A stretch of 63,886 nt of DNA, filler included, from Octopus bimaculoides (taxonomy: Eukaryota): NCBI RefSeq assembly GCF_001194135.2. It is 5 parts of 5 records of this genome, joined end to end, with 100 filler letters (N's around TTAATTAATTAA, not from the genome) between each part and the next. Parts side by side here need not be neighbours in the genome. Positions count along the whole stretch, not along the records: positions 1 to 17,952 come from NC_069003.1; 4 more parts are not named here. The stretch is one strand, 5' to 3'. Both the position numbers and the translations under genes were made by a program. How positions within the stretch are numbered: position 1 is the first letter of the stretch; each line of letters begins with the position of its first letter. Positions 631 through 16,350 of this stretch are shown one piece after another. The notes beneath the pieces are model-generated. The model was not told where the DNA came from. It worked only from the letters and a program-made list of their open reading frames with translations, and did no database searches.

Positions 631-787
631 CGTATGTGTGTATGTATGTATGTATGTATGTAAAACTTGCCTTTCATGAAACAACAGTTTCAATTCTTTA
701 TATAATGATCTGATTCTCTCTAATTGTTTTCTTTTTCTCTTCTTTCCACAGATTCTGCTTGATCTATCGAACCCCCAAACCGAAACC

Positions 788-1390
788 ATGAAAATCTCTC
801 TCTTTGTGACTTCCGTATTGGCTGTTGTCTTTGTTACGCTCATCGCCGACAGCAAAGCGGTGAAAAAACACTCAACTAAATACGGGAAACAAGGCGAAGA
901 AGTTGCACATCACGGTACCGCCGTCGGCAAACACGTTGCCCACGGTGGATATCAACAACATGCTGCAAAGGGCATGAAAGGGGCCTTCAGTGTGGGCTAC
1001 CACAATCATATGGATGACCACCACGACAACTACGGACATCATGAACATCATGAGGACCACGGCAAACACAAGGACGACATGATGCAGAAATACGGAGCTA
1101 TGGCAGCCCATGCCGGCCACGCAGCTGCCGGAGGAGTTCATAAAGTGGCAGCTGCACATGGCGATTTCTTCGGCGTTCGTGGAGCCCATGCTGCTTTCGC
1201 AGGCCCTGGAGGCCCCATGATGGGATTCGGTGGTGGTTTTGGTGGTGGTCATGGTGGATTCGGTGGGGGACACGGTGGCAACGGAGGCCACGGTGAATAT
1301 GGCGGCGGTTACGGCGGTGGTTGGGGCGGTCACGGAGGCTATGGTGGTTTCGGTGGCTGGGGTGGATTTGGTGGGTATGGACATTATTAG
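788..1390 (+). CDS. Secreted His/Gly-rich low-complexity protein, 200 aa, single coding exon (candidate structural/biomaterial protein)
   Basis: Intact ORF with AACCATG start. N-terminal hydrophobic signal-peptide-like MKISLFVTSVLAVVFVTLIADS. About 26 His, no Cys, and a GGF/GGH/GGY/GGW C-terminal block. GC-richer than its flanks. A strong acceptor (long pyrimidine tract, CACAG at 747-751) lies 36 nt upstream, implying a 5' UTR intron. Confidence 0.88.
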   Translation: MKISLFVTSVLAVVFVTLIADSKAVKKHSTKYGKQGEEVAHHGTAVGKHVAHGGYQQHAAKGMKGAFSVGYHNHMDDHHDNYGHHEHHEDHGKHKDDMMQKYGAMAAHAGHAAAGGVHKVAAAHGDFFGVRGAHAAFAGPGGPMMGFGGGFGGGHGGFGGGHGGNGGHGEYGGGYGGGWGGHGGYGGFGGWGGFGGYGHY

Positions 1391-1426
1391 AGACAAAACA
1401 AAGGATAAATGACACATGCATGAACT

Positions 1427-1466
<40 letters not shown>

Positions 1467-2205
1467 NNNNNNNNNNNNNNNNNNNNNNNNNNNNNNNNNN
1501 NNNNNNNNNNNNNNNNNNNNNNNNNNNNNNNNNNNNNNNNNNNNNNATATATACAGGAACACCCGTGCTATGATATCACACCATCCTCAAAATAGATGAC
1601 GATTATGGAAACTCTAACCACTGCATTTCAAAAGCATCAACACCGACACAACAATAATAACCTCTTCCAATACTTCATGCTGTAATCTGATAAACTGATG
1701 TTGTACAATTAAAATAATTCCATTGAAACAAAGAACCGGTGTTATCTTATTAATTATTATATTGCATTATATTATATTATATTATATTATATTATATTAT
1801 ATTATATTATATTATATCACATTACTTCTATTGTATTATATTATTATATTATTATATTAAAAATATGATCGTATATTGAATTTTGCTGTTGTTGTTCCTC
1901 TTTGATACCAGCCTGTCAGGAACCACCGCTAACTCTATAATACAAATTTCCTGTTTCGAAATGATTTAGAATATAATTTTTCATCAAAATGTCATGTTAA
2001 TTTATGTTCTAAACACCAGCTTTAAAGAACGGCAAAGTTATTTTACAAAAGTCTTCATTATTTTCAAAATTAATTGACACATCGACATGGTATTTCAACC
2101 GAAATATGGTAACAAAAGAGTTAACAGCGTTCCATTTGTGACTATACAGTTTATCTACAACAACACCACCTAGAACAGCATTATCTAATGTATTCTATTA
2201 TTCTA

Positions 2206-3620: not shown

Positions 3621-3639
3621 ATATTCTTTACTGTTCTAA

Positions 3640-3852
3640 AGCGACCCGCTGGCAGAATCCTTAGCAAACCGGACGGCATTTCGTCCGTCTTTACGTTCTG
3701 AATTCAAATTCCGCCAAGGTCGACTTCGCCTTGCATCCTTTCGAAGTCGATAAAATAAGTACCAGTTGAACACTGGGGAGAGGGGTCGATGTAATCGACT
3801 AGCTCCCTCCTCTGAATTTGCTGGCCTTGTGCAAAAATATGAAACCAATATT
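3640..3852 (+). mobile_element. SINE family A copy
   Basis: GCTGGCAGAA...GAGTTCAAATTCCGCC...GTCGATAAAATAAGTACCAG consensus, present more than 15 times in the window. Confidence 0.8.
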
Positions 3853-4334: not shown

Positions 4335-4882
4335 CATACATACATACATACATAACTTAGAAAATCCCTCTGTTATGGAATACATTCATAAACACCAACT
4401 CAAAGAATACTGGTGGAATATTCTCATCAAAACTTGTGTCAAATGTAAGCTTAATAGACCGGATATTGTTGTTTGGAACAGAAGGGGCAAAGGTATGTAC
4501 TATCATAGAGGTCAGCTGCCCCGCAGATATAAATGTCTCTTTGAAAATCAAAGTAAGAGAGGATATCTATGGACAACTGCTTCGAAACCTCCAGATTCTA
4601 TATCCAGTCTATGAATTCATATACATACCAATAATAATTGCAGCACTAAGTTTTGTTAGTAACTGCTTAAAGGAGATTCTGGATAAACTGGGATTTTCAG
4701 AAAGAGAAATTGACCGGCTGATTCATACATTACAAGTGCAATCCGTGAGTGGAACAGTAAAAATATGCAGGACTTTTCTCAAGTTCCAAATATGAATTTG
4801 TATGTGTTAACTACATCCCAAAGATGGAACCTTGTATCTTTGCTGGAGATCGGCTCCCACCTCAGTGAGAGATTTATAATAA
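4335..4882 (+). mobile_element. R4/Dong-like retrotransposon 3' fragment (restriction-like endonuclease region)
   Basis: RPDIVVWN...IIEVSCPADINV...YGQLLRNLQILYP...GTVKICRTF; PD-(D/E)xK-type motif; frameshifted; (CATA)n on both sides. Confidence 0.8.
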
Positions 4883-6849: not shown

Positions 6850-7615
6850 NNNNNNNNNNNNNNNNNNNNNNNNNNNNNNNNNNNNNNNNNNNNNNNNNNN
6901 NNNNNNNNNNNNNNNNNNNNNNNNNNNNNNNNNNNNNNNNNNNNNNNNNNNNNNNNNNNNNNNNNNNNNNNNNNNNNNNNNNNNNNNNNNNNNNNNNNNN
7001 NNNNNNNNNNNNNNNNNNNNNNNNNNNNNNNNNNNNNNNNNNNNNNNNNNNNNNNNNNNNNNNNNNNNNNNNNNNNNNNNNNNNNNNNNNNNNNNNNNNN
7101 NNNNNNNNNNNNNNNNNNNNNNNNNNNNNNNNNNNNNNNNNNNNNNNNNNNNNNNNNNNNNNNNNNNNNNNNNNNNNNNNNNNNNNNNNNNNNNNNNNNN
7201 NNNNNNNNNNNNNNNNNNNNNNNNNNNNNNNNNNNNNNNNNNNNNNNNNNNNNNNNNNNNNNNNNNNNNNNNNNNNNNNNNNNNNNNNNNNNNNNNNNNN
7301 NNNNNNNNNNNNNNNNNNNNNNNNNNNNNNNNNNNNNNNNNNNNNNNNNNNNNNNNNNNNNNNNNNNNNNNNNNNNNNNNNNNNNNNNNNNNNNNNNNNN
7401 NNNNNNNNNNNNNNNNNNNNNNNNNNNNNNNNNNNNNNNNNNNNNNNNNNNNNATAATAAAGAATTACTCATTTGTTTACTTTGGCAAAGAGTAAAAACA
7501 CATCATCATGGCGAAGAAAAAGAAATAGCTACCATTAAGAATCGAACCTGTGTCGTAAACTTATGTCATGGGGATAGTCCCTATGATGTTGACAGCGTTT
7601 CTCTCTCTTTCTTTC

Positions 7616-8418: not shown

Positions 8419-8849
8419 NNNNNNNNNNNNNNNNNNNNNNNNNNNNNNNNNNNNNNNNNNNNNNNNNNNNNNNNNNNNNNNNNNNNNNNNNNNNNNNNNN
8501 NNNNNNNNNNNNNNNNNNNNNNNNNNNNNNNNNNNNNNNNNNNNNNNNNNNNNNNNNNNNNNNNNNNNNNNNNNNNNNNNNNNNNNNNNNNNNNNNNNNN
8601 NNNNNNNNNNNNNNNNNNNNNNNNNNNNNNNNNNNNNNNNNNNNNNNNNNNNNNNNNNNNNNNNNNNNNNNNNNNNNNNNNNNNNNNNNNNNNNNNNNNN
8701 NNNNNNNNNNNNNNNNNNNNNNNNNNNNNNNNNNNNNNNNNNNNNNNNNNNNNNNNNNNNNNNNNNNNNNNNNNNNNNNNNNNNNNNNNNNNNNNNNNNN
8801 NNNNNNNNNNNNNNNNNNNNNNNNNNNNNNNNNNNNNNNNNNNNNNNNN

Positions 8850-8892
<43 letters not shown>

Positions 8893-10083
8893 GCGAGAGA
8901 GAGAGAGAATATCTACAGATTTTATAAAGTAGTCGGATAGTGGGTTGCTAAATTTGTTTGTGCTTTTTTGCGTCTCTTCATTAATTTAGCAGTACATATT
9001 TTATGTACAATACAGCATGCTTCAGAAAGGCTGCAAGACATTTGAATTTCAGAAAGCCTAGCATTGTAAGAAACGACAGTATAATCACATTCATTGCGTA
9101 GGAAGAGAAAAAGCGAGTCTCCAAACGGACCGTTTCACGGTTTGCTGGCCGCTTCTCAGAGAACACGTACCTGCCCAATCAATACAATCGATAGCGCTTA
9201 ATATTATATTTTACCATTTGGTCGTAAAGCTGAGCACTGGGTCGATATAATCTGACTTACCCACTTCCTCGAATTTGAAACCAATACTTTTTACATGTTC
9301 TTACTTGTTTCAGTCATTAGACTGCGGCCATGCTGGGGCACAGCCTTCATGAATTTTACTCGAATGAATCGACCCCAGAACGTACGTACATATGTATGTA
9401 TGTATGTATGTGGGAGACATAAGTCGCTGACCGCCCATCCAGAGAAGAAGAAGAAGAAGAAGAAGATAAAAGACGGCAACGCAAGGCCCGGCAACTCCAG
9501 CCAAGACCATCACCCTCCCTGCCATGCGATCAATGCACGAGGCTGTTCCATTGCCGACTTGACCTTCTGAGCCATGTTAGGTTTAAGCATCGGCACAAGA
9601 TGAACCAAAATCGGACACGAGTGGTGCTGACGAGGGATGGCATTGTGAGTGGATTTGGTAGACGGAAACTGAAAGAAGCCCGTCGTATATATATATATAT
9701 ATATATNNNNNNNNNNNNNNNNNNNNNNNNNNNNNNNNNNNNNNNNNNNNNNNNNNNNNNNNNNNNNNNNNNNNNNNNNNNNNNNNNNNNNNNNNNNNNN
9801 NNNNNNNNNNNNNNNNNNNNNNNNNNNNNNNNNNNNNNNNNNNNNNNNNNNNNNNNNNNNNNNNNNNNNNNNNNNNNNNNNNNNNNNNNNNNNNNNNNNN
9901 NNNNNNNNNNNNNNNNNNNNNNNNNNNNNNNNNNNNNNNNNNNNNNNNNNNNNNNNNNNNNNNNNNNNNNNNNNNNNNNNNNNNNNNNNNNNNNNNNNNN
10001 NNNNNNNNNNNNNNNNNNNNNNNNNNNNNNNNNNNNNNNNNNNNNNNNNNNNNNNNNNNNNNNNNNNNNNNNNNNNNNNNNNN

Positions 10084-10236
10084 ATGCTGTTGTTGATGAT
10101 GATGATGATGATGATGATGGTGGTGGTGATGGTGATGATGATGATGATGATGACAATGATGGTGATGATGATGGTGATGATGATGATAACGGTGATGATA
10201 CTGATGATGATGATGATGGTGATGATGATGACGATG

Positions 10237-10267
<31 letters not shown>

Positions 10268-10385
10268 CGATGATGATGATGATGATGATGATGACGATGA
10301 TGATGACGATGACGATGATGATGATGATGATAACGATGACGGTGATGATGACGGTGATGATGATGATGATGATGAATGATGATGA
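10084..10385. repeat. (GAT)n/(GAC)n trinucleotide tract
   Basis: Simple repeat; produces spurious poly-D/M/I ORFs. Confidence 0.95.
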
Positions 10386-10609
10386 AGAGAGATTGTTGAT
10401 TTTTTTTTTTTTAAATAGCATTGAAAATGAATGAATAAAATTTAAAAAAAAAAGAAAAATAATTAATTAAAAGCAAATGACTGATTGAAAGAAAATAAAC
10501 ATTATTGTTTTACAAAGCAATTAAAATAGTCTAATGTCAGTGCCATGTCTAATTTGTGGTTAATAAGATTCTCCACTACTACTACTGCTGCTACGACTCC
10601 TAACCACTA

Positions 10610-11254: not shown

Positions 11255-11597
11255 CTATAGGCACAAGGCCTGACATCCTTTGGGGAGGGGATCAGTCGAT
11301 TACATCGACCCCAGTGCTTATCTGGTACTTAATTTATCGACCCCGAAACGATGACAGGCAAAGTCGACCCCGGCGGAATTTGAACTCAGAACGTGATGAC
11401 GGACGAAATACCGCTAAGCATTTCGTCCGGCGTGCTAACGATTCTGCCAGCTCGCTACCTTTATAATAATAATAATAATAATAGTTTCAAATTTTGCCAC
11501 AACGGCAGTAATTTTAGGGGAGTGTTCAACTGGTACTTATTTTATCGACCCAGAAAGGATGAAAGGCAAAGTCGACCCCAGCGGCATTTGAACTCAG
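11255..11597 (-). mobile_element. Two tandem SINE family A copies within (ATA)n
   Basis: Reverse-complement match to the family A consensus. Confidence 0.8.
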
Positions 11598-11822
11598 CAA
11601 TTCTTATCATAGTGGGCGCATTAGGTGTGATAAAAAAATATTCAGACAAATACATAACAAAAACACCAGGACTAACAAATATATACAACATACAGAAAAT
11701 AGCACTACTAGGCACTGCAAACATCCTACATAAAACACTTTCAATACAGTAACCATAAGAGCATACCCAAGGCACACAGAGCTGTGCTCGGTAGTGTAGT
11801 GAAAGCACGTGATAAAAATAAG
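11598..11822 (+). mobile_element. Second R4/Dong-like family 3' end, followed by (TAA)n
   Basis: IIVGALGVIKKYSDKYITKTPGLTNIYNIQKIALLGTANILHKTLSIQ* resembles an RLE-element C-terminus. Confidence 0.65.
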
Positions 11823-15879: not shown

Positions 15880-16350
15880 TTCAAATTTTAGCACAAGGCC
15901 AGCAATTTGTTGGGGGCAGAGGGTAAGTCGATTACATCGACCCTGGTATTCAACTAGCCCTTATTTATCGACCCCAAAGGTACGAAAGACATAGTCGACC
16001 TCGGCGGAATTTGAACTCAGAACGTAAAGACGGACGAAATGCCGCTATGCATTTTGCCCGGGGTGCTAACGATTCAGCCAGTACGAAGCCTTATTCTAGT
16101 AATGAAACTGATATATGTAAAATGTCACAAATATTATTTTCTACTCTAGGCACAAGGCCCGAAAGTTTGGGGGAGGGGGCCAGTAGATTAGATCGACCCC
16201 TGGACGCAACTGGTACTTAATTTATCGATCCCAAAAGGATGAAAGGCAAAGTCGACCTCGGCGGAATTTGAACTCAGAATGTAAAGACAGAAAAAAAAAA
16301 CCGCTAAGCATTTCACGGCGTGCTAACGTTTCAGCCAGCTCGCCGCCTTG
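15880..16350 (-). mobile_element. Two tandem SINE family A copies
   Basis: Reverse-complement match to the family A consensus. Confidence 0.8.

What the first reader, a model, noticed from the sequence alone, without database searches (positions are those of the whole stretch)
752..1390. Orphan-like secreted His/Gly-rich protein with a modular biomaterial architecture
Seen: signal peptide; a His/Asp/Lys-rich metal-binding-like middle (HNHMDDHHDNYGHHEHHEDHGKH); an Ala/His block (AAHAGHAAAGG..AAAHG..AHAAFAG); a PGGP hinge; then a Gly-aromatic tail (GGF/GGH/GGY/GGW, ending GGYGHY). There is no Cys, and no Leu or Ile after the signal peptide. Established: squid histidine-rich beak proteins and suckerins combine Ala/His-rich and Gly/aromatic modules, form coacervates or beta-sheet networks, and cross-link via His. 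Inference: this may be an octopod beak, radula, sucker-cuticle or egg-case structural protein, or a His/Gly-rich antimicrobial or Zn/Cu-binding protein. It lacks the exact GHGxY/GAGFA repeats of squid beak proteins, so it may be a distinct family.
Basis: partly seen in the sequence, partly recalled or inferred. Interest (0 to 1): 0.78.

Follow-up and report, generated by a model that had tools for sequence, protein, structure and literature searches.

The report
Octopus secreted His/Gly-rich beak-protein-like gene
This is a real-looking Octopus bimaculoides gene for a secreted, disordered protein whose composition and module order resemble the squid beak-hardening proteins that the genome's authors said they could not identify in octopus, but it shares no detectable sequence homology with them and its tissue is unknown.

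Summary
Window 788-1390 (+) is a 200-aa ORF with a signal-peptide-like N-terminus. After it come a basic Ala/His/Gly region, a His/Asp/Glu cluster, an Ala/His block, a PGGP hinge and a 56-aa Gly/aromatic tail. It has no Cys, and no Leu or Ile after residue 19.

The DNA is Octopus bimaculoides (GCA_001194135.2, CM046623.1), where a gene is called at the same coordinates. No Pfam, PDB or large-database relative was found, but those databases also lack squid beak proteins, so "orphan" is only weakly tested.

Compared with published Dosidicus HBP-1, composition is close (G+A+H 58.5% vs 62.1%) and the module order is the same. Homology is not detectable (BLASTP E=0.59; shuffle z 1.8). Tandem GHGxY and GAGFA repeats are absent.

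Predicted charge falls from +20 (pH 5.5) to about 0 (pH 8.1).

My best reading is a pH-switched, condensing, His-cross-linkable matrix protein of a hard extracellular tissue, analogous to squid HBPs. The tissue is untested.

One hint supports common origin: the squid HBP cluster is on Dpe12, which shares a linkage group with Obi23. This contig is Obi23 only if the accession numbering runs in chromosome order, which I could not confirm.

The parts
699..705 (+). TATATAA, a candidate TATA box 83 nt upstream of the ATG
   Evidence: Regex scan and sequence. It is the only TATAWAW between 600 and 1430 outside the (AT)n tract. Function is inferred.
716..751 (+). 3' splice-site-like sequence: CTAAT branch-point-like motif, a 23-nt tract that is 91% pyrimidine, then CAG
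   Evidence: It is the only site on the + strand of the window with at least 17/20 pyrimidines before YAG. It competes with the TATA reading, and RNA data are needed to decide.
752..787 (+). Putative 5' UTR, with A at -3 of the ATG. It is open in frame with the CDS (12 codons).
   Evidence: The nearest upstream in-frame stop is at 677-679.
788..1390 (+). Complete coding sequence, 200 codons plus TAG
   Evidence: A public gene call with identical limits exists in GCA_001194135.2.
788..859 (+). Signal peptide (residues 1-24, MKISLFVTSVLAVVFVTLIADSKA), with predicted cleavage SKA|VKK
   Evidence: Hydropathy 2.5-2.8. The -3/-1 rule was applied by eye. It is the only part of the AF2 model with pLDDT above 70.
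860..994 (+). Basic N-terminal region (residues 25-69) with VAHHG/VAHGG motifs; K+R 16%, His 13%
   Evidence: module table.
995..1078 (+). His/acid cluster (residues 70-97, GYHNHMDDHHDNYGHHEHHEDHGKHKDD): His 36%, Asp+Glu 29%
   Evidence: It sits at the same relative position as the NHAEHHDGVHD cluster of DgHBP-1.
1079..1198 (+). Ala/His block (residues 98-137): Ala 33%, His 12%
1199..1219 (+). Hinge AGPGGPM, which holds the only two prolines in the protein
1220..1387 (+). Gly/aromatic tail (residues 145-200): Gly 64%, F/Y/W 21%, His 9%, almost uncharged. It contains 14 overlapping X-G(2-3)-X units (X = F, H, Y, W, N) and ends in GHY.
   Evidence: DNA-level repeats are weak. pLDDT is 35-42.
1708..1713 (+). 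ATTAAA, the nearest polyadenylation-signal variant downstream. There is no AATAAA up to 2400. An 80-N assembly gap lies between it and the stop codon.
   Evidence: Function is inferred.

Best explanation
A genuine O. bimaculoides gene with all of its coding sequence in one exon. It encodes a ~17.7 kDa secreted, intrinsically disordered structural (matrix) protein.

Proposed mechanism (inferred, not shown):
1. In the acidic secretory pathway the 26 His are protonated and the chain carries about +20, so it stays soluble.
2. At seawater pH the net charge collapses to about 0.
3. The uncharged tail has aromatic 'stickers' (F/Y/W every ~5 residues, or every ~3 counting His) separated by Gly spacers. 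It then drives self-association or coacervation.
4. The condensate infiltrates an extracellular scaffold, most likely chitin.
5. His, Lys and Tyr side chains become sites for quinone/catechol cross-linking, and the His/Asp/Glu cluster may bind Zn or Cu. The result is a hardened, dehydrated composite.

In function it is an analogue of squid histidine-rich beak proteins. The most likely site is the beak or buccal mass, or another sclerotised chitinous lining such as the radula or sucker cuticle.
For: Shown:
- A complete ORF with a signal-peptide-like start, and a public gene call at the same limits.
- A strong compositional island against the flanks, with a protein-level rather than DNA-level repeat.
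- No folded domain: Pfam and PDB give nothing, AF2 mean pLDDT is 51 and the tail 35-42.
- Mature G+A+H is 58.5%, against 62.1% for DgHBP-1. G, H, Y, F, V, P, D and E each lie within 3 percentage points of DgHBP-1, and both proteins lack Cys and Ile.
- The module order matches HBP-1: non-repetitive Ala/His N-terminus, acidic His cluster at about 30% of the length, Gly/His/aromatic C-terminus, final ...HY.
- Computed charge is +20.2, +2.0 and -0.9 at pH 5.5, 7.0 and 8.1.

From the literature:
- HBPs are defined by more than 50% G+A+H, a non-repetitive Gly/Ala/His N-terminus and a repetitive C-terminus. They coacervate on His deprotonation through Tyr-driven contacts (PMC11931252; PMC6884462).
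- Squid beak cross-links are His-catechol adducts (PMC9716703).

Hint:
- The squid HBP cluster is on Dpe12, and Dpe12 and Obi23 form CephLG32 (PMC9068888 Suppl. Table 9). The contig is CM046623.1.
Against: - There are no expression data of any kind, so tissue and secretion are inferred.
- There is no significant alignment to DgHBP-1: BLASTP E=0.59, Smith-Waterman z=1.7-2.0 against block shuffles, and the reversed sequence scores the same.
- The experimentally defined coacervation motif is absent, namely at least 4 tandem GHGLY, or 2 with GAGFA/GHGLH spacers. Only isolated GHGEY and GHGGY occur, and there is no GAGFA or GFA.
- Leu is 0% against 11%. Lys (11), Met (7) and Trp (2) are present but absent from HBP-1. 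pI is 7.6 against about 6, and GRAVY is -0.75 against +0.20.
- It is a single copy within about 27 kb, whereas squid has a 10-gene cluster. Part of the upstream sequence is assembly gap.
- The genome's authors report that they could not identify HBPs in O. bimaculoides.
- The equation CM046623.1 = Obi23 is unverified.
Confidence: 0.5

Rival explanations
1. It is a true but highly diverged member (orthologue or co-orthologue) of the squid histidine-rich beak protein family. The family would then predate the octopod-decapodiform split, and similarity searches missed it.
For: The composition, module order and C-terminal ...HY match HBP-1. The squid HBP cluster lies on Dpe12, which shares linkage group CephLG32 with Obi23. 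The contig accession CM046623.1 would be the 23rd of a 30-chromosome series. Low-complexity families lose alignable signal quickly; the paper gives about 275 My of divergence.
Against: There is no alignment signal above composition. The defining tandem penta-repeats are absent. The chromosome identity is unverified. Linkage-group co-location is coarse, and local microsynteny could not be examined. It is a single copy.
Confidence: 0.2
2. It is a secreted structural or adhesive protein of a different material, for example egg chorion or stalk cement from the oviducal gland, a sucker or skin secretion, or stylet matrix. It would be convergent with other Gly/Tyr/His-rich extracellular proteins and not involved in beak-type sclerotisation.
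For: The signal peptide, the disorder and the Gly/aromatic X-G(2-3)-X tail are generic features of many extracellular matrix, eggshell and shell-matrix proteins (own knowledge). An unrelated eukaryotic protein, P0001, shows the same layout of a His/acid cluster followed by a GGF/GGY tail, so the design recurs.
Against: Nothing specific points to it. The full G+A+H-dominated composition matches HBPs more closely than it matches Gly/Tyr eggshell or shell proteins, which are usually poor in His and Ala (own knowledge, not tested here).
Confidence: 0.17
3. It is a secreted Gly/His-rich host-defence or metal-sequestering protein (antimicrobial, antifungal, or a Zn/Cu buffer).
For: His/Gly-rich peptides with antifungal activity exist in arthropods and plants (own knowledge). 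The HNHMDDHHDNYGHHEHHEDHGKH cluster looks like a metal-binding site.
Against: The mature size is 17.7 kDa. The only dibasic site lies next to the signal cleavage, and there is only one Arg, so no small peptides would be released. Net charge is only +2 at pH 7 and -0.9 at pH 8.1. A 56-residue uncharged Gly/aromatic tail is atypical.
Confidence: 0.08
4. It is not a functional gene: a chance or decaying ORF in a GC-rich low-complexity island that an automatic pipeline called.
For: There is no transcript evidence. No exact-protein contig other than the genome is on record, even though the index includes assemblies of sequencing runs. The antisense strand also carries a 181-aa ORF, as happens in Gly-codon-rich DNA. 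No orthologue could be retrieved.
Against: The first ATG is followed at once by a canonical signal peptide. Five compositionally distinct modules occur in a sensible order. Leu, Ile and Cys are completely excluded (p about 1e-12). The repeat uses mixed synonymous codons. A strong splice acceptor and a TATA box lie just upstream.
Confidence: 0.05

Closest known systems
Squid histidine-rich beak proteins (Dosidicus gigas HBP-1/-2/-3; 10-gene cluster on D. pealeii chromosome 12)
   Same: - Secreted, about 15-18 kDa, intrinsically disordered.
- G+A+H above 50% (58.5% vs 62.1%), with near-identical G, H, Y, F, V, P, D and E fractions and no Cys or Ile.
- A non-repetitive Ala/His N-terminus with an acidic His cluster, then a Gly/His/aromatic repetitive C-terminus ending in ...HY.
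- Charge is controlled by His titration.
- HBP-3 is described as having 'long Gly-rich repeats'.
   Different: - No detectable homology (E=0.59; z 1.8).
- No tandem GHGxY and no GAGFA/GFA. The tail period is X-G(2-3)-X, with 64% Gly and no Ala or Leu.
- Leu 0% vs 11%. Lys, Met and Trp are present.
- pI 7.6 vs about 6, hydrophilic rather than hydrophobic overall.
- Single copy. Expression unknown.
- The octopus genome paper reports that the family could not be identified in this species.
Suckerins (squid and cuttlefish sucker ring teeth proteins)
   Same: - High Gly, Tyr and His, with pI near 8.
- Ala/His-rich stretches resemble module M1.
- GGY/GYG peptides resemble module M2.
- Pro marks a module boundary.
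   Different: - Suckerins are tandem P[M1]P[M2] block copolymers with many repeats, and M2 is rich in Leu (GGLY, GLGGY).
- Here there is one pass through each module, a single PGGP, no Leu, and very little Thr or Ser.
- Octopus suckers have no ring teeth, and suckerins were not identified in O. bimaculoides.
Gly/His-rich jaw proteins of polychaetes (Nereis Nvjp-1, Glycera jaw protein), cited from own knowledge
   Same: Secreted Gly- and His-dominated disordered proteins of a hard feeding tool, where His binds Zn or Cu and pH or metal triggers condensation.
   Different: They come from a different phylum and have much higher His. No sequences were available here, so nothing was tested. This resemblance is a lead only.
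P0001, an unnamed protein on a eukaryotic contig of ENA assembly ERZ25067493
   Same: It was the only hit in 1.84 billion representatives (E=7e-4). A His/acid cluster is followed by a GGF/GGY/GGL tail in the same order, and Smith-Waterman z is 5.3 over block shuffles.
   Different: It has a Thr/Val/Leu-rich middle, and no signal peptide in the called ORF, which is an exon fragment. The organism is unknown, there is no DNA similarity to the window, and the repeat register alone can explain the score.

Membership tests
Squid histidine-rich beak proteins (HBP) | Gly+Ala+His above 50% of residues | tested here: met
   58.5% of the mature protein, against 62.1% in DgHBP-1. The criterion comes from PMC11931252.
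Squid histidine-rich beak proteins (HBP) | Non-repetitive N-terminal part with Ala-rich and His-rich (acidic) clusters | tested here: met
   Residues 25-137 include a His/acid cluster at 70-97 and an Ala/His block at 98-137. Compare HBP-1 Suppl. Fig. 1.
Squid histidine-rich beak proteins (HBP) | C-terminal tandem pentapeptides GHGXaXb (GHGLY/GHGPY), at least 4 in tandem or 2 with spacers | tested here: not met
   Only two isolated matches, GHGEY and GHGGY, with a non-hydrophobic Xa. The tail period is X-G(2-3)-X.
Squid histidine-rich beak proteins (HBP) | GAGFA / GFA motifs (optional; absent in HBP-2) | tested here: not met
   Zero GAGFA and zero GFA. The nearest match is AHAAFAG.
Squid histidine-rich beak proteins (HBP) | Detectable sequence homology to a family member | tested here: not met
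   BLASTP against DgHBP-1 gives E=0.59. Smith-Waterman scores 160 against a block-shuffle mean of 140±11, and the reversed sequence also scores 160. Only HBP-1 was available; HBP-2, HBP-3 and the D. pealeii set were not.
Squid histidine-rich beak proteins (HBP) | pI about 6 and an overall hydrophobic chain | tested here: not met
   pI 7.57 and GRAVY -0.75, against 6.04 and +0.20 for HBP-1. Charge is still His-switched.
Squid histidine-rich beak proteins (HBP) | Expression in buccal mass/beccublasts and presence in the beak | not testable with these tools
   No RNA-seq or proteome access.
Squid histidine-rich beak proteins (HBP) | Genomic position syntenic with the squid HBP cluster (Dpe12) | tested here: inconclusive
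   Dpe12 and Obi23 share CephLG32. The contig is CM046623.1. Equating that accession with Obi23 is an unverified inference, and microsynteny could not be examined.
Suckerins | [quoted passage not shown] | tested here: not met
   There is a single pass through each module, only two Pro (one PGGP), no Leu, and 2 Thr and 2 Ser in the mature protein.
Reflectins | Repeating motif MDX5(MDX5)nMDX3-4 and a conserved N-terminal domain | tested here: not met
   The sequence contains a single MD dipeptide (HMDD).
Processed Gly/His-rich antimicrobial peptides | A precursor cut at basic sites into small, strongly cationic peptides | tested here: not met
   The only dibasic site is KK at residues 26-27, there is one Arg, and net charge is +2 at pH 7. 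Activity was not testable.

The most novel reading that the evidence does not exclude
This gene is the octopod counterpart of the squid histidine-rich beak proteins. It would be either a very diverged orthologue sitting on the chromosome (Obi23) homologous to the squid HBP chromosome (Dpe12), or an independently evolved replacement. Coleoid beaks in general would then be hardened by His-switched coacervating proteins, using a different sticker grammar (X-G(2-3)-X with F/Y/W/H and no Leu) from the squid GHGxY code. The published inference that HBPs are a decapodiform innovation would need revising.
Probability: 0.25. Interest if true: 0.75.

Novelty: new variant of a known kind. Interest (0 to 1): 0.55.

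Why it matters
Octopus beaks are sclerotised chitin-protein composites like squid beaks. Beak proteins have so far been characterised in only one squid species. The chromosome-scale octopus genome paper reports that HBPs and suckerins could not be identified in O. bimaculoides and treats them as decapodiform novelties.

This gene is therefore a concrete, testable candidate for what hardens an octopus beak, or another chitinous lining. Testing it would address whether the HBP strategy is ancestral to coleoids or arose convergently.

It would also give the peptide-coacervate field a natural sequence with a different grammar from the GHGxY peptides now engineered for drug delivery: Leu-free, 64% Gly, Trp-containing, and with zero net charge at seawater pH.

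If it proves to be an untranscribed ORF or a generic secreted Gly-rich protein, it is of minor interest.

Tried and rejected
- **Pfam** on the protein: no family.
- **Word-indexed search of 5.8 billion proteins**, with the whole protein and with the non-repetitive N-terminal 147 aa: nothing.
- **Exhaustive phmmer against 1.84 billion representatives**: one borderline low-complexity hit, P0001. It lies on an unidentified eukaryotic contig with no DNA similarity to the window.
- **Control of database coverage**: the exact protein is not in the protein collection, and a query made of published HBP-1/HBP-2 peptides found nothing. These negatives therefore cannot establish orphan status within cephalopods.
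- **PDB sequence search**: only a chance short-chain dehydrogenase hit, E=0.2.
- **Metagenome contig scan**: 95 pattern matches, none confirmed.
- **Literature search for exact peptides of this protein**: none.
- **Literature search for an octopus HBP or beak proteome**: none.
- **Attempts to confirm that CM046623.1 is Obi23**, by length or accession, in the paper, its supplements and the library: failed.
- **Paralogues in the window and in 9 kb of extra upstream sequence (L001)**: none. The other tblastn hits fall on trinucleotide repeats.
- **Antisense 181-aa ORF (872-1417, -)**: rejected as the coding strand. It has no signal or module structure and is the expected mirror of GGN-rich codons.
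- **Rfam on the window**: nothing.
- **Pfam on five other ORFs in the window**: nothing.
- **AF2 model**: no fold search was run on it, because a model with pLDDT 51 would give meaningless matches.
Full report
**1. The observation**

The window is AT-rich eukaryotic DNA full of microsatellites and assembly gaps. Positions 788-1390 on the + strand hold a complete 200-codon ORF from ATG to TAG. Composition is Gly 28.5%, His 13.0% and Ala 11.5%, with no Cys. All Leu and Ile lie within the first 19 residues.

The N-terminus has the anatomy of a cleavable signal peptide. It has Lys2, an 18-residue uncharged core with Kyte-Doolittle means of 2.5-2.8, and then D-S-K-A with small residues at -3 and -1 before Val25. 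This is a heuristic reading; SignalP was not available.

The ORF is a sharp compositional island, 54.7% GC against 28.3% in the flanks. The chance of 237 stop-free codons is about 6e-9 with flank composition and about 2e-5 with the ORF's own composition. The chance of 176 residues without Leu or Ile is about 1e-12 at generic frequencies.

The Gly-rich tail is not a recent DNA microsatellite. Tandem Repeats Finder sees only short arrays with 70-88% matches, and all four Gly codons are used. The periodicity is therefore maintained at the protein level.

The antisense 181-aa ORF (872-1417) is the usual mirror of GGN-rich codons and has no gene-like features.

**2. Source and gene model**

An exact-sequence look-up places the protein on Octopus bimaculoides assembly GCA_001194135.2, record CM046623.1 (37.68 Mb). 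A gene is called there with exactly these limits, at record positions 24,539,763-24,540,365. The window starts directly after a 1.6-kb assembly gap, and much of the additional upstream 9 kb is also gap.

Two alternative 5' structures fit the sequence:
- **Splice acceptor.** A branch-point-like CTAAT, a 23-nt tract that is 91% pyrimidine, and CAG end at 751.
- **TATA box.** A TATATAA at 699-705 would place a transcription start near 730.

The 12 codons between 752 and the ATG are open in frame, so an upstream coding exon cannot be excluded. However, the ATG has A at -3 and is followed at once by the signal peptide. There is no AATAAA downstream; the nearest variant is ATTAAA at 1708, beyond an 80-N gap. 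No paralogue lies in the window or in L001.

**3. Anatomy of the protein**

| Module | Residues | Features |
|---|---|---|
| Signal | 1-24 | hydrophobic core, SKA\|VKK cleavage predicted |
| Basic region | 25-69 | K+R 16%; VAHHG/VAHGG motifs |
| His/acid cluster | 70-97 | His 36%, Asp+Glu 29% |
| Ala/His block | 98-137 | Ala 33% |
| Hinge | 138-144 | AGPGGPM, the only prolines |
| Gly/aromatic tail | 145-200 | Gly 64%, F/Y/W 21%, His 9%, one charged residue |

The tail has 14 overlapping X-G(2-3)-X units and ends in GHY.

The mature protein is 17.7 kDa with pI 7.57. Its computed net charge is +29.5, +20.2, +6.0, +2.0 and -0.9 at pH 4.5, 5.5, 6.5, 7.0 and 8.1.

AlphaFold2 run on the single sequence gives mean pLDDT 51. 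Only the signal helix exceeds 70, and the tail scores 35-42. This is consistent with intrinsic disorder but does not prove it.

**4. Relatives**

Pfam gives nothing, and PDB gives only a chance hit. The word-indexed search of 5.8 billion proteins gives nothing, whether with the whole protein or with the non-repetitive 147 N-terminal residues.

Exhaustive phmmer against 1.84 billion representatives gives one hit, P0001 (E=7e-4). Its layout is a His/acid cluster followed by a GGF/GGY/GGL tail. It scores well above block shuffles (z=5.3). However, it is an exon fragment on an unidentified eukaryotic contig with no DNA similarity to the window, and shared repeat register can explain the score.

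These negative results are weak for the question that matters. The protein collection contains neither this protein nor anything matching the published squid HBP peptides. No cephalopod genome could be searched. A metagenome scan was empty.

**5. Direct comparison with a squid beak protein**

The full recombinant Dosidicus gigas HBP-1 sequence is printed in Supplementary Fig. 1 of PMC6884462.

*Composition*:

| Residue(s) | Octopus mature | DgHBP-1 |
|---|---|---|
| Gly | 32.4% | 30.4% |
| His | 14.8% | 11.8% |
| Tyr | 5.7% | 5.0% |
| Phe | 5.1% | 5.0% |
| Val | 4.5% | 4.3% |
| Pro | 1.1% | 1.2% |
| Asp | 4.0% | 3.1% |
| Glu | 2.8% | 2.5% |
| Cys, Ile | none | none |
| G+A+H | 58.5% | 62.1% |
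| Leu | 0% | 11.2% |
| Ala | 11.4% | 19.9% |
| Lys | 6.2% | 0% |
| Met | 4.0% | 0% |
| Trp | 1.1% | 0% |

*Module order* is the same. Both have a non-repetitive Ala/His N-terminus, an acidic His cluster about 30% of the way along, a Gly/His/aromatic C-terminus, and a final ...HY.

*Homology is not detectable.* BLASTP gives E=0.59. The Smith-Waterman score of 160 is only 1.7-1.8 SD above shuffles that preserve local composition, and the reversed octopus sequence scores the same.

*The experimentally defined coacervation grammar of HBPs is absent.* That grammar is at least 4 tandem GHGLY, or two with GAGFA/GHGLH spacers (PMC6884462). The octopus protein has only isolated GHGEY and GHGGY, and no GAGFA or GFA. 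It therefore fails membership on the defining repeats and on homology, while meeting the compositional and architectural criteria summarised in PMC11931252.

Suckerins are defined by tandem P[M1]P[M2] with Leu-rich M2, and reflectins by MDX5 repeats. Neither definition is met.

**6. Context from the literature**

The paper describing this assembly reports a cluster of 10 buccal-mass-expressed HBP genes on D. pealeii chromosome 12. [quoted passage not shown]

Reviews state that beak proteins have been characterised in only one species. I found no paper reporting an octopod HBP-like protein, and none containing peptides of this protein.

Supplementary Table 9 of the same paper puts Dpe12 and Obi23 in one cephalopod linkage group, CephLG32. 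The contig here is CM046623.1. If the 30 chromosome accessions run in order from CM046601, which I recall but could not confirm, this is Obi23. That is the chromosome homologous to the squid HBP chromosome. By chromosome count the prior chance is about 1 in 30. This is a coarse hint, not evidence of orthology, and microsynteny could not be examined.

**7. Most likely mechanism**

*Shown:* a secreted-type, disordered, His-titratable chain whose net charge vanishes at seawater pH, and an uncharged tail of aromatic residues spaced by Gly.

*Inferred:* by analogy with HBPs, His deprotonation triggers Tyr-mediated coacervation that dehydrates and stiffens a chitin scaffold, and His-catechol adducts then cross-link it. 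On that basis:
1. The protein is stored soluble and polycationic at acidic pH.
2. It condenses on secretion.
3. It is cross-linked through His, Lys or Tyr.
4. The His/Asp/Glu cluster may bind Zn or Cu.

The tissue is not known. Beak or buccal mass is the best guess, and radula, sucker cuticle, stylet or egg envelope are alternatives.

**8. Verdict**

I rate it a new variant of a known kind: an HBP-like secreted His/Gly/Ala/aromatic disordered protein with a different repeat grammar, in the lineage where the genome's authors reported that HBPs could not be identified.

The interest is moderate to high for cephalopod biomaterials and evolution. It is limited by the total lack of expression, conservation and biochemical data.

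Noticed in passing
window 11279-11408, 11487-11616, 15910-16039, 16167-16296 (+); related ORF text also at 3636-3848 (-): A dispersed repeat of about 130 nt is present in at least four direct copies (63-83% identity). Spurious ORFs across it share the string ...[23 protein letters not shown].... It looks like a SINE-type or other short interspersed element of the octopus genome. Rfam found no tRNA or other RNA family in it.
   Followed up: partly
window 872-1417 (-): A 181-aa antisense ORF overlaps almost the whole gene. It is the expected by-product of GGN/GCN/CAY-rich codons read backwards, and it has no signal or module structure.
   Followed up: yes
window 1 and L001 7622-9213; window 1467-1546, 2411-2477, 6850-7453, 8419-8849, 9707-10083: The window begins immediately after a 1.6-kb run of N, and five more assembly gaps lie inside it, mostly within microsatellites. 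A promoter, a 5' exon or a neighbouring paralogue could be hidden in them.
   Followed up: partly
window 10084-10420: A long imperfect (GAT/GAC/GGT)n trinucleotide array generates poly-Asp, poly-Met and poly-Ile ORFs of 100-300 aa on both strands. These account for the spurious tblastn hits to the His/Asp cluster.
   Followed up: yes
window 4436-4795 (+): A 119-aa ORF of ordinary, non-repetitive composition ([34 protein letters not shown]...) with no Pfam match. It may be a fragment of a mobile-element protein.
   Followed up: partly
L002 9464-10117 (+) (ENA ERZ25067493, contig ctg165807_2x_l): An unidentified eukaryote encodes an exon with the same layout as the octopus protein: a His/acid cluster (HEADHHHHTADNDTVHNHADHHLHEESHH), then a Thr-rich linker, then a GYGGFGGLGYGG tail. 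This suggests the design recurs outside cephalopods. A homeodomain gene fragment lies about 3 kb away.
   Followed up: partly
PMC9068888 Supplementary Table 9 (not window sequence): Dpe12, the chromosome of the squid HBP cluster, and Obi23 are listed together as cephalopod linkage group 32. The window's contig accession ends in ...623, which would be chromosome 23 if the accessions run in chromosome order.
   Followed up: partly
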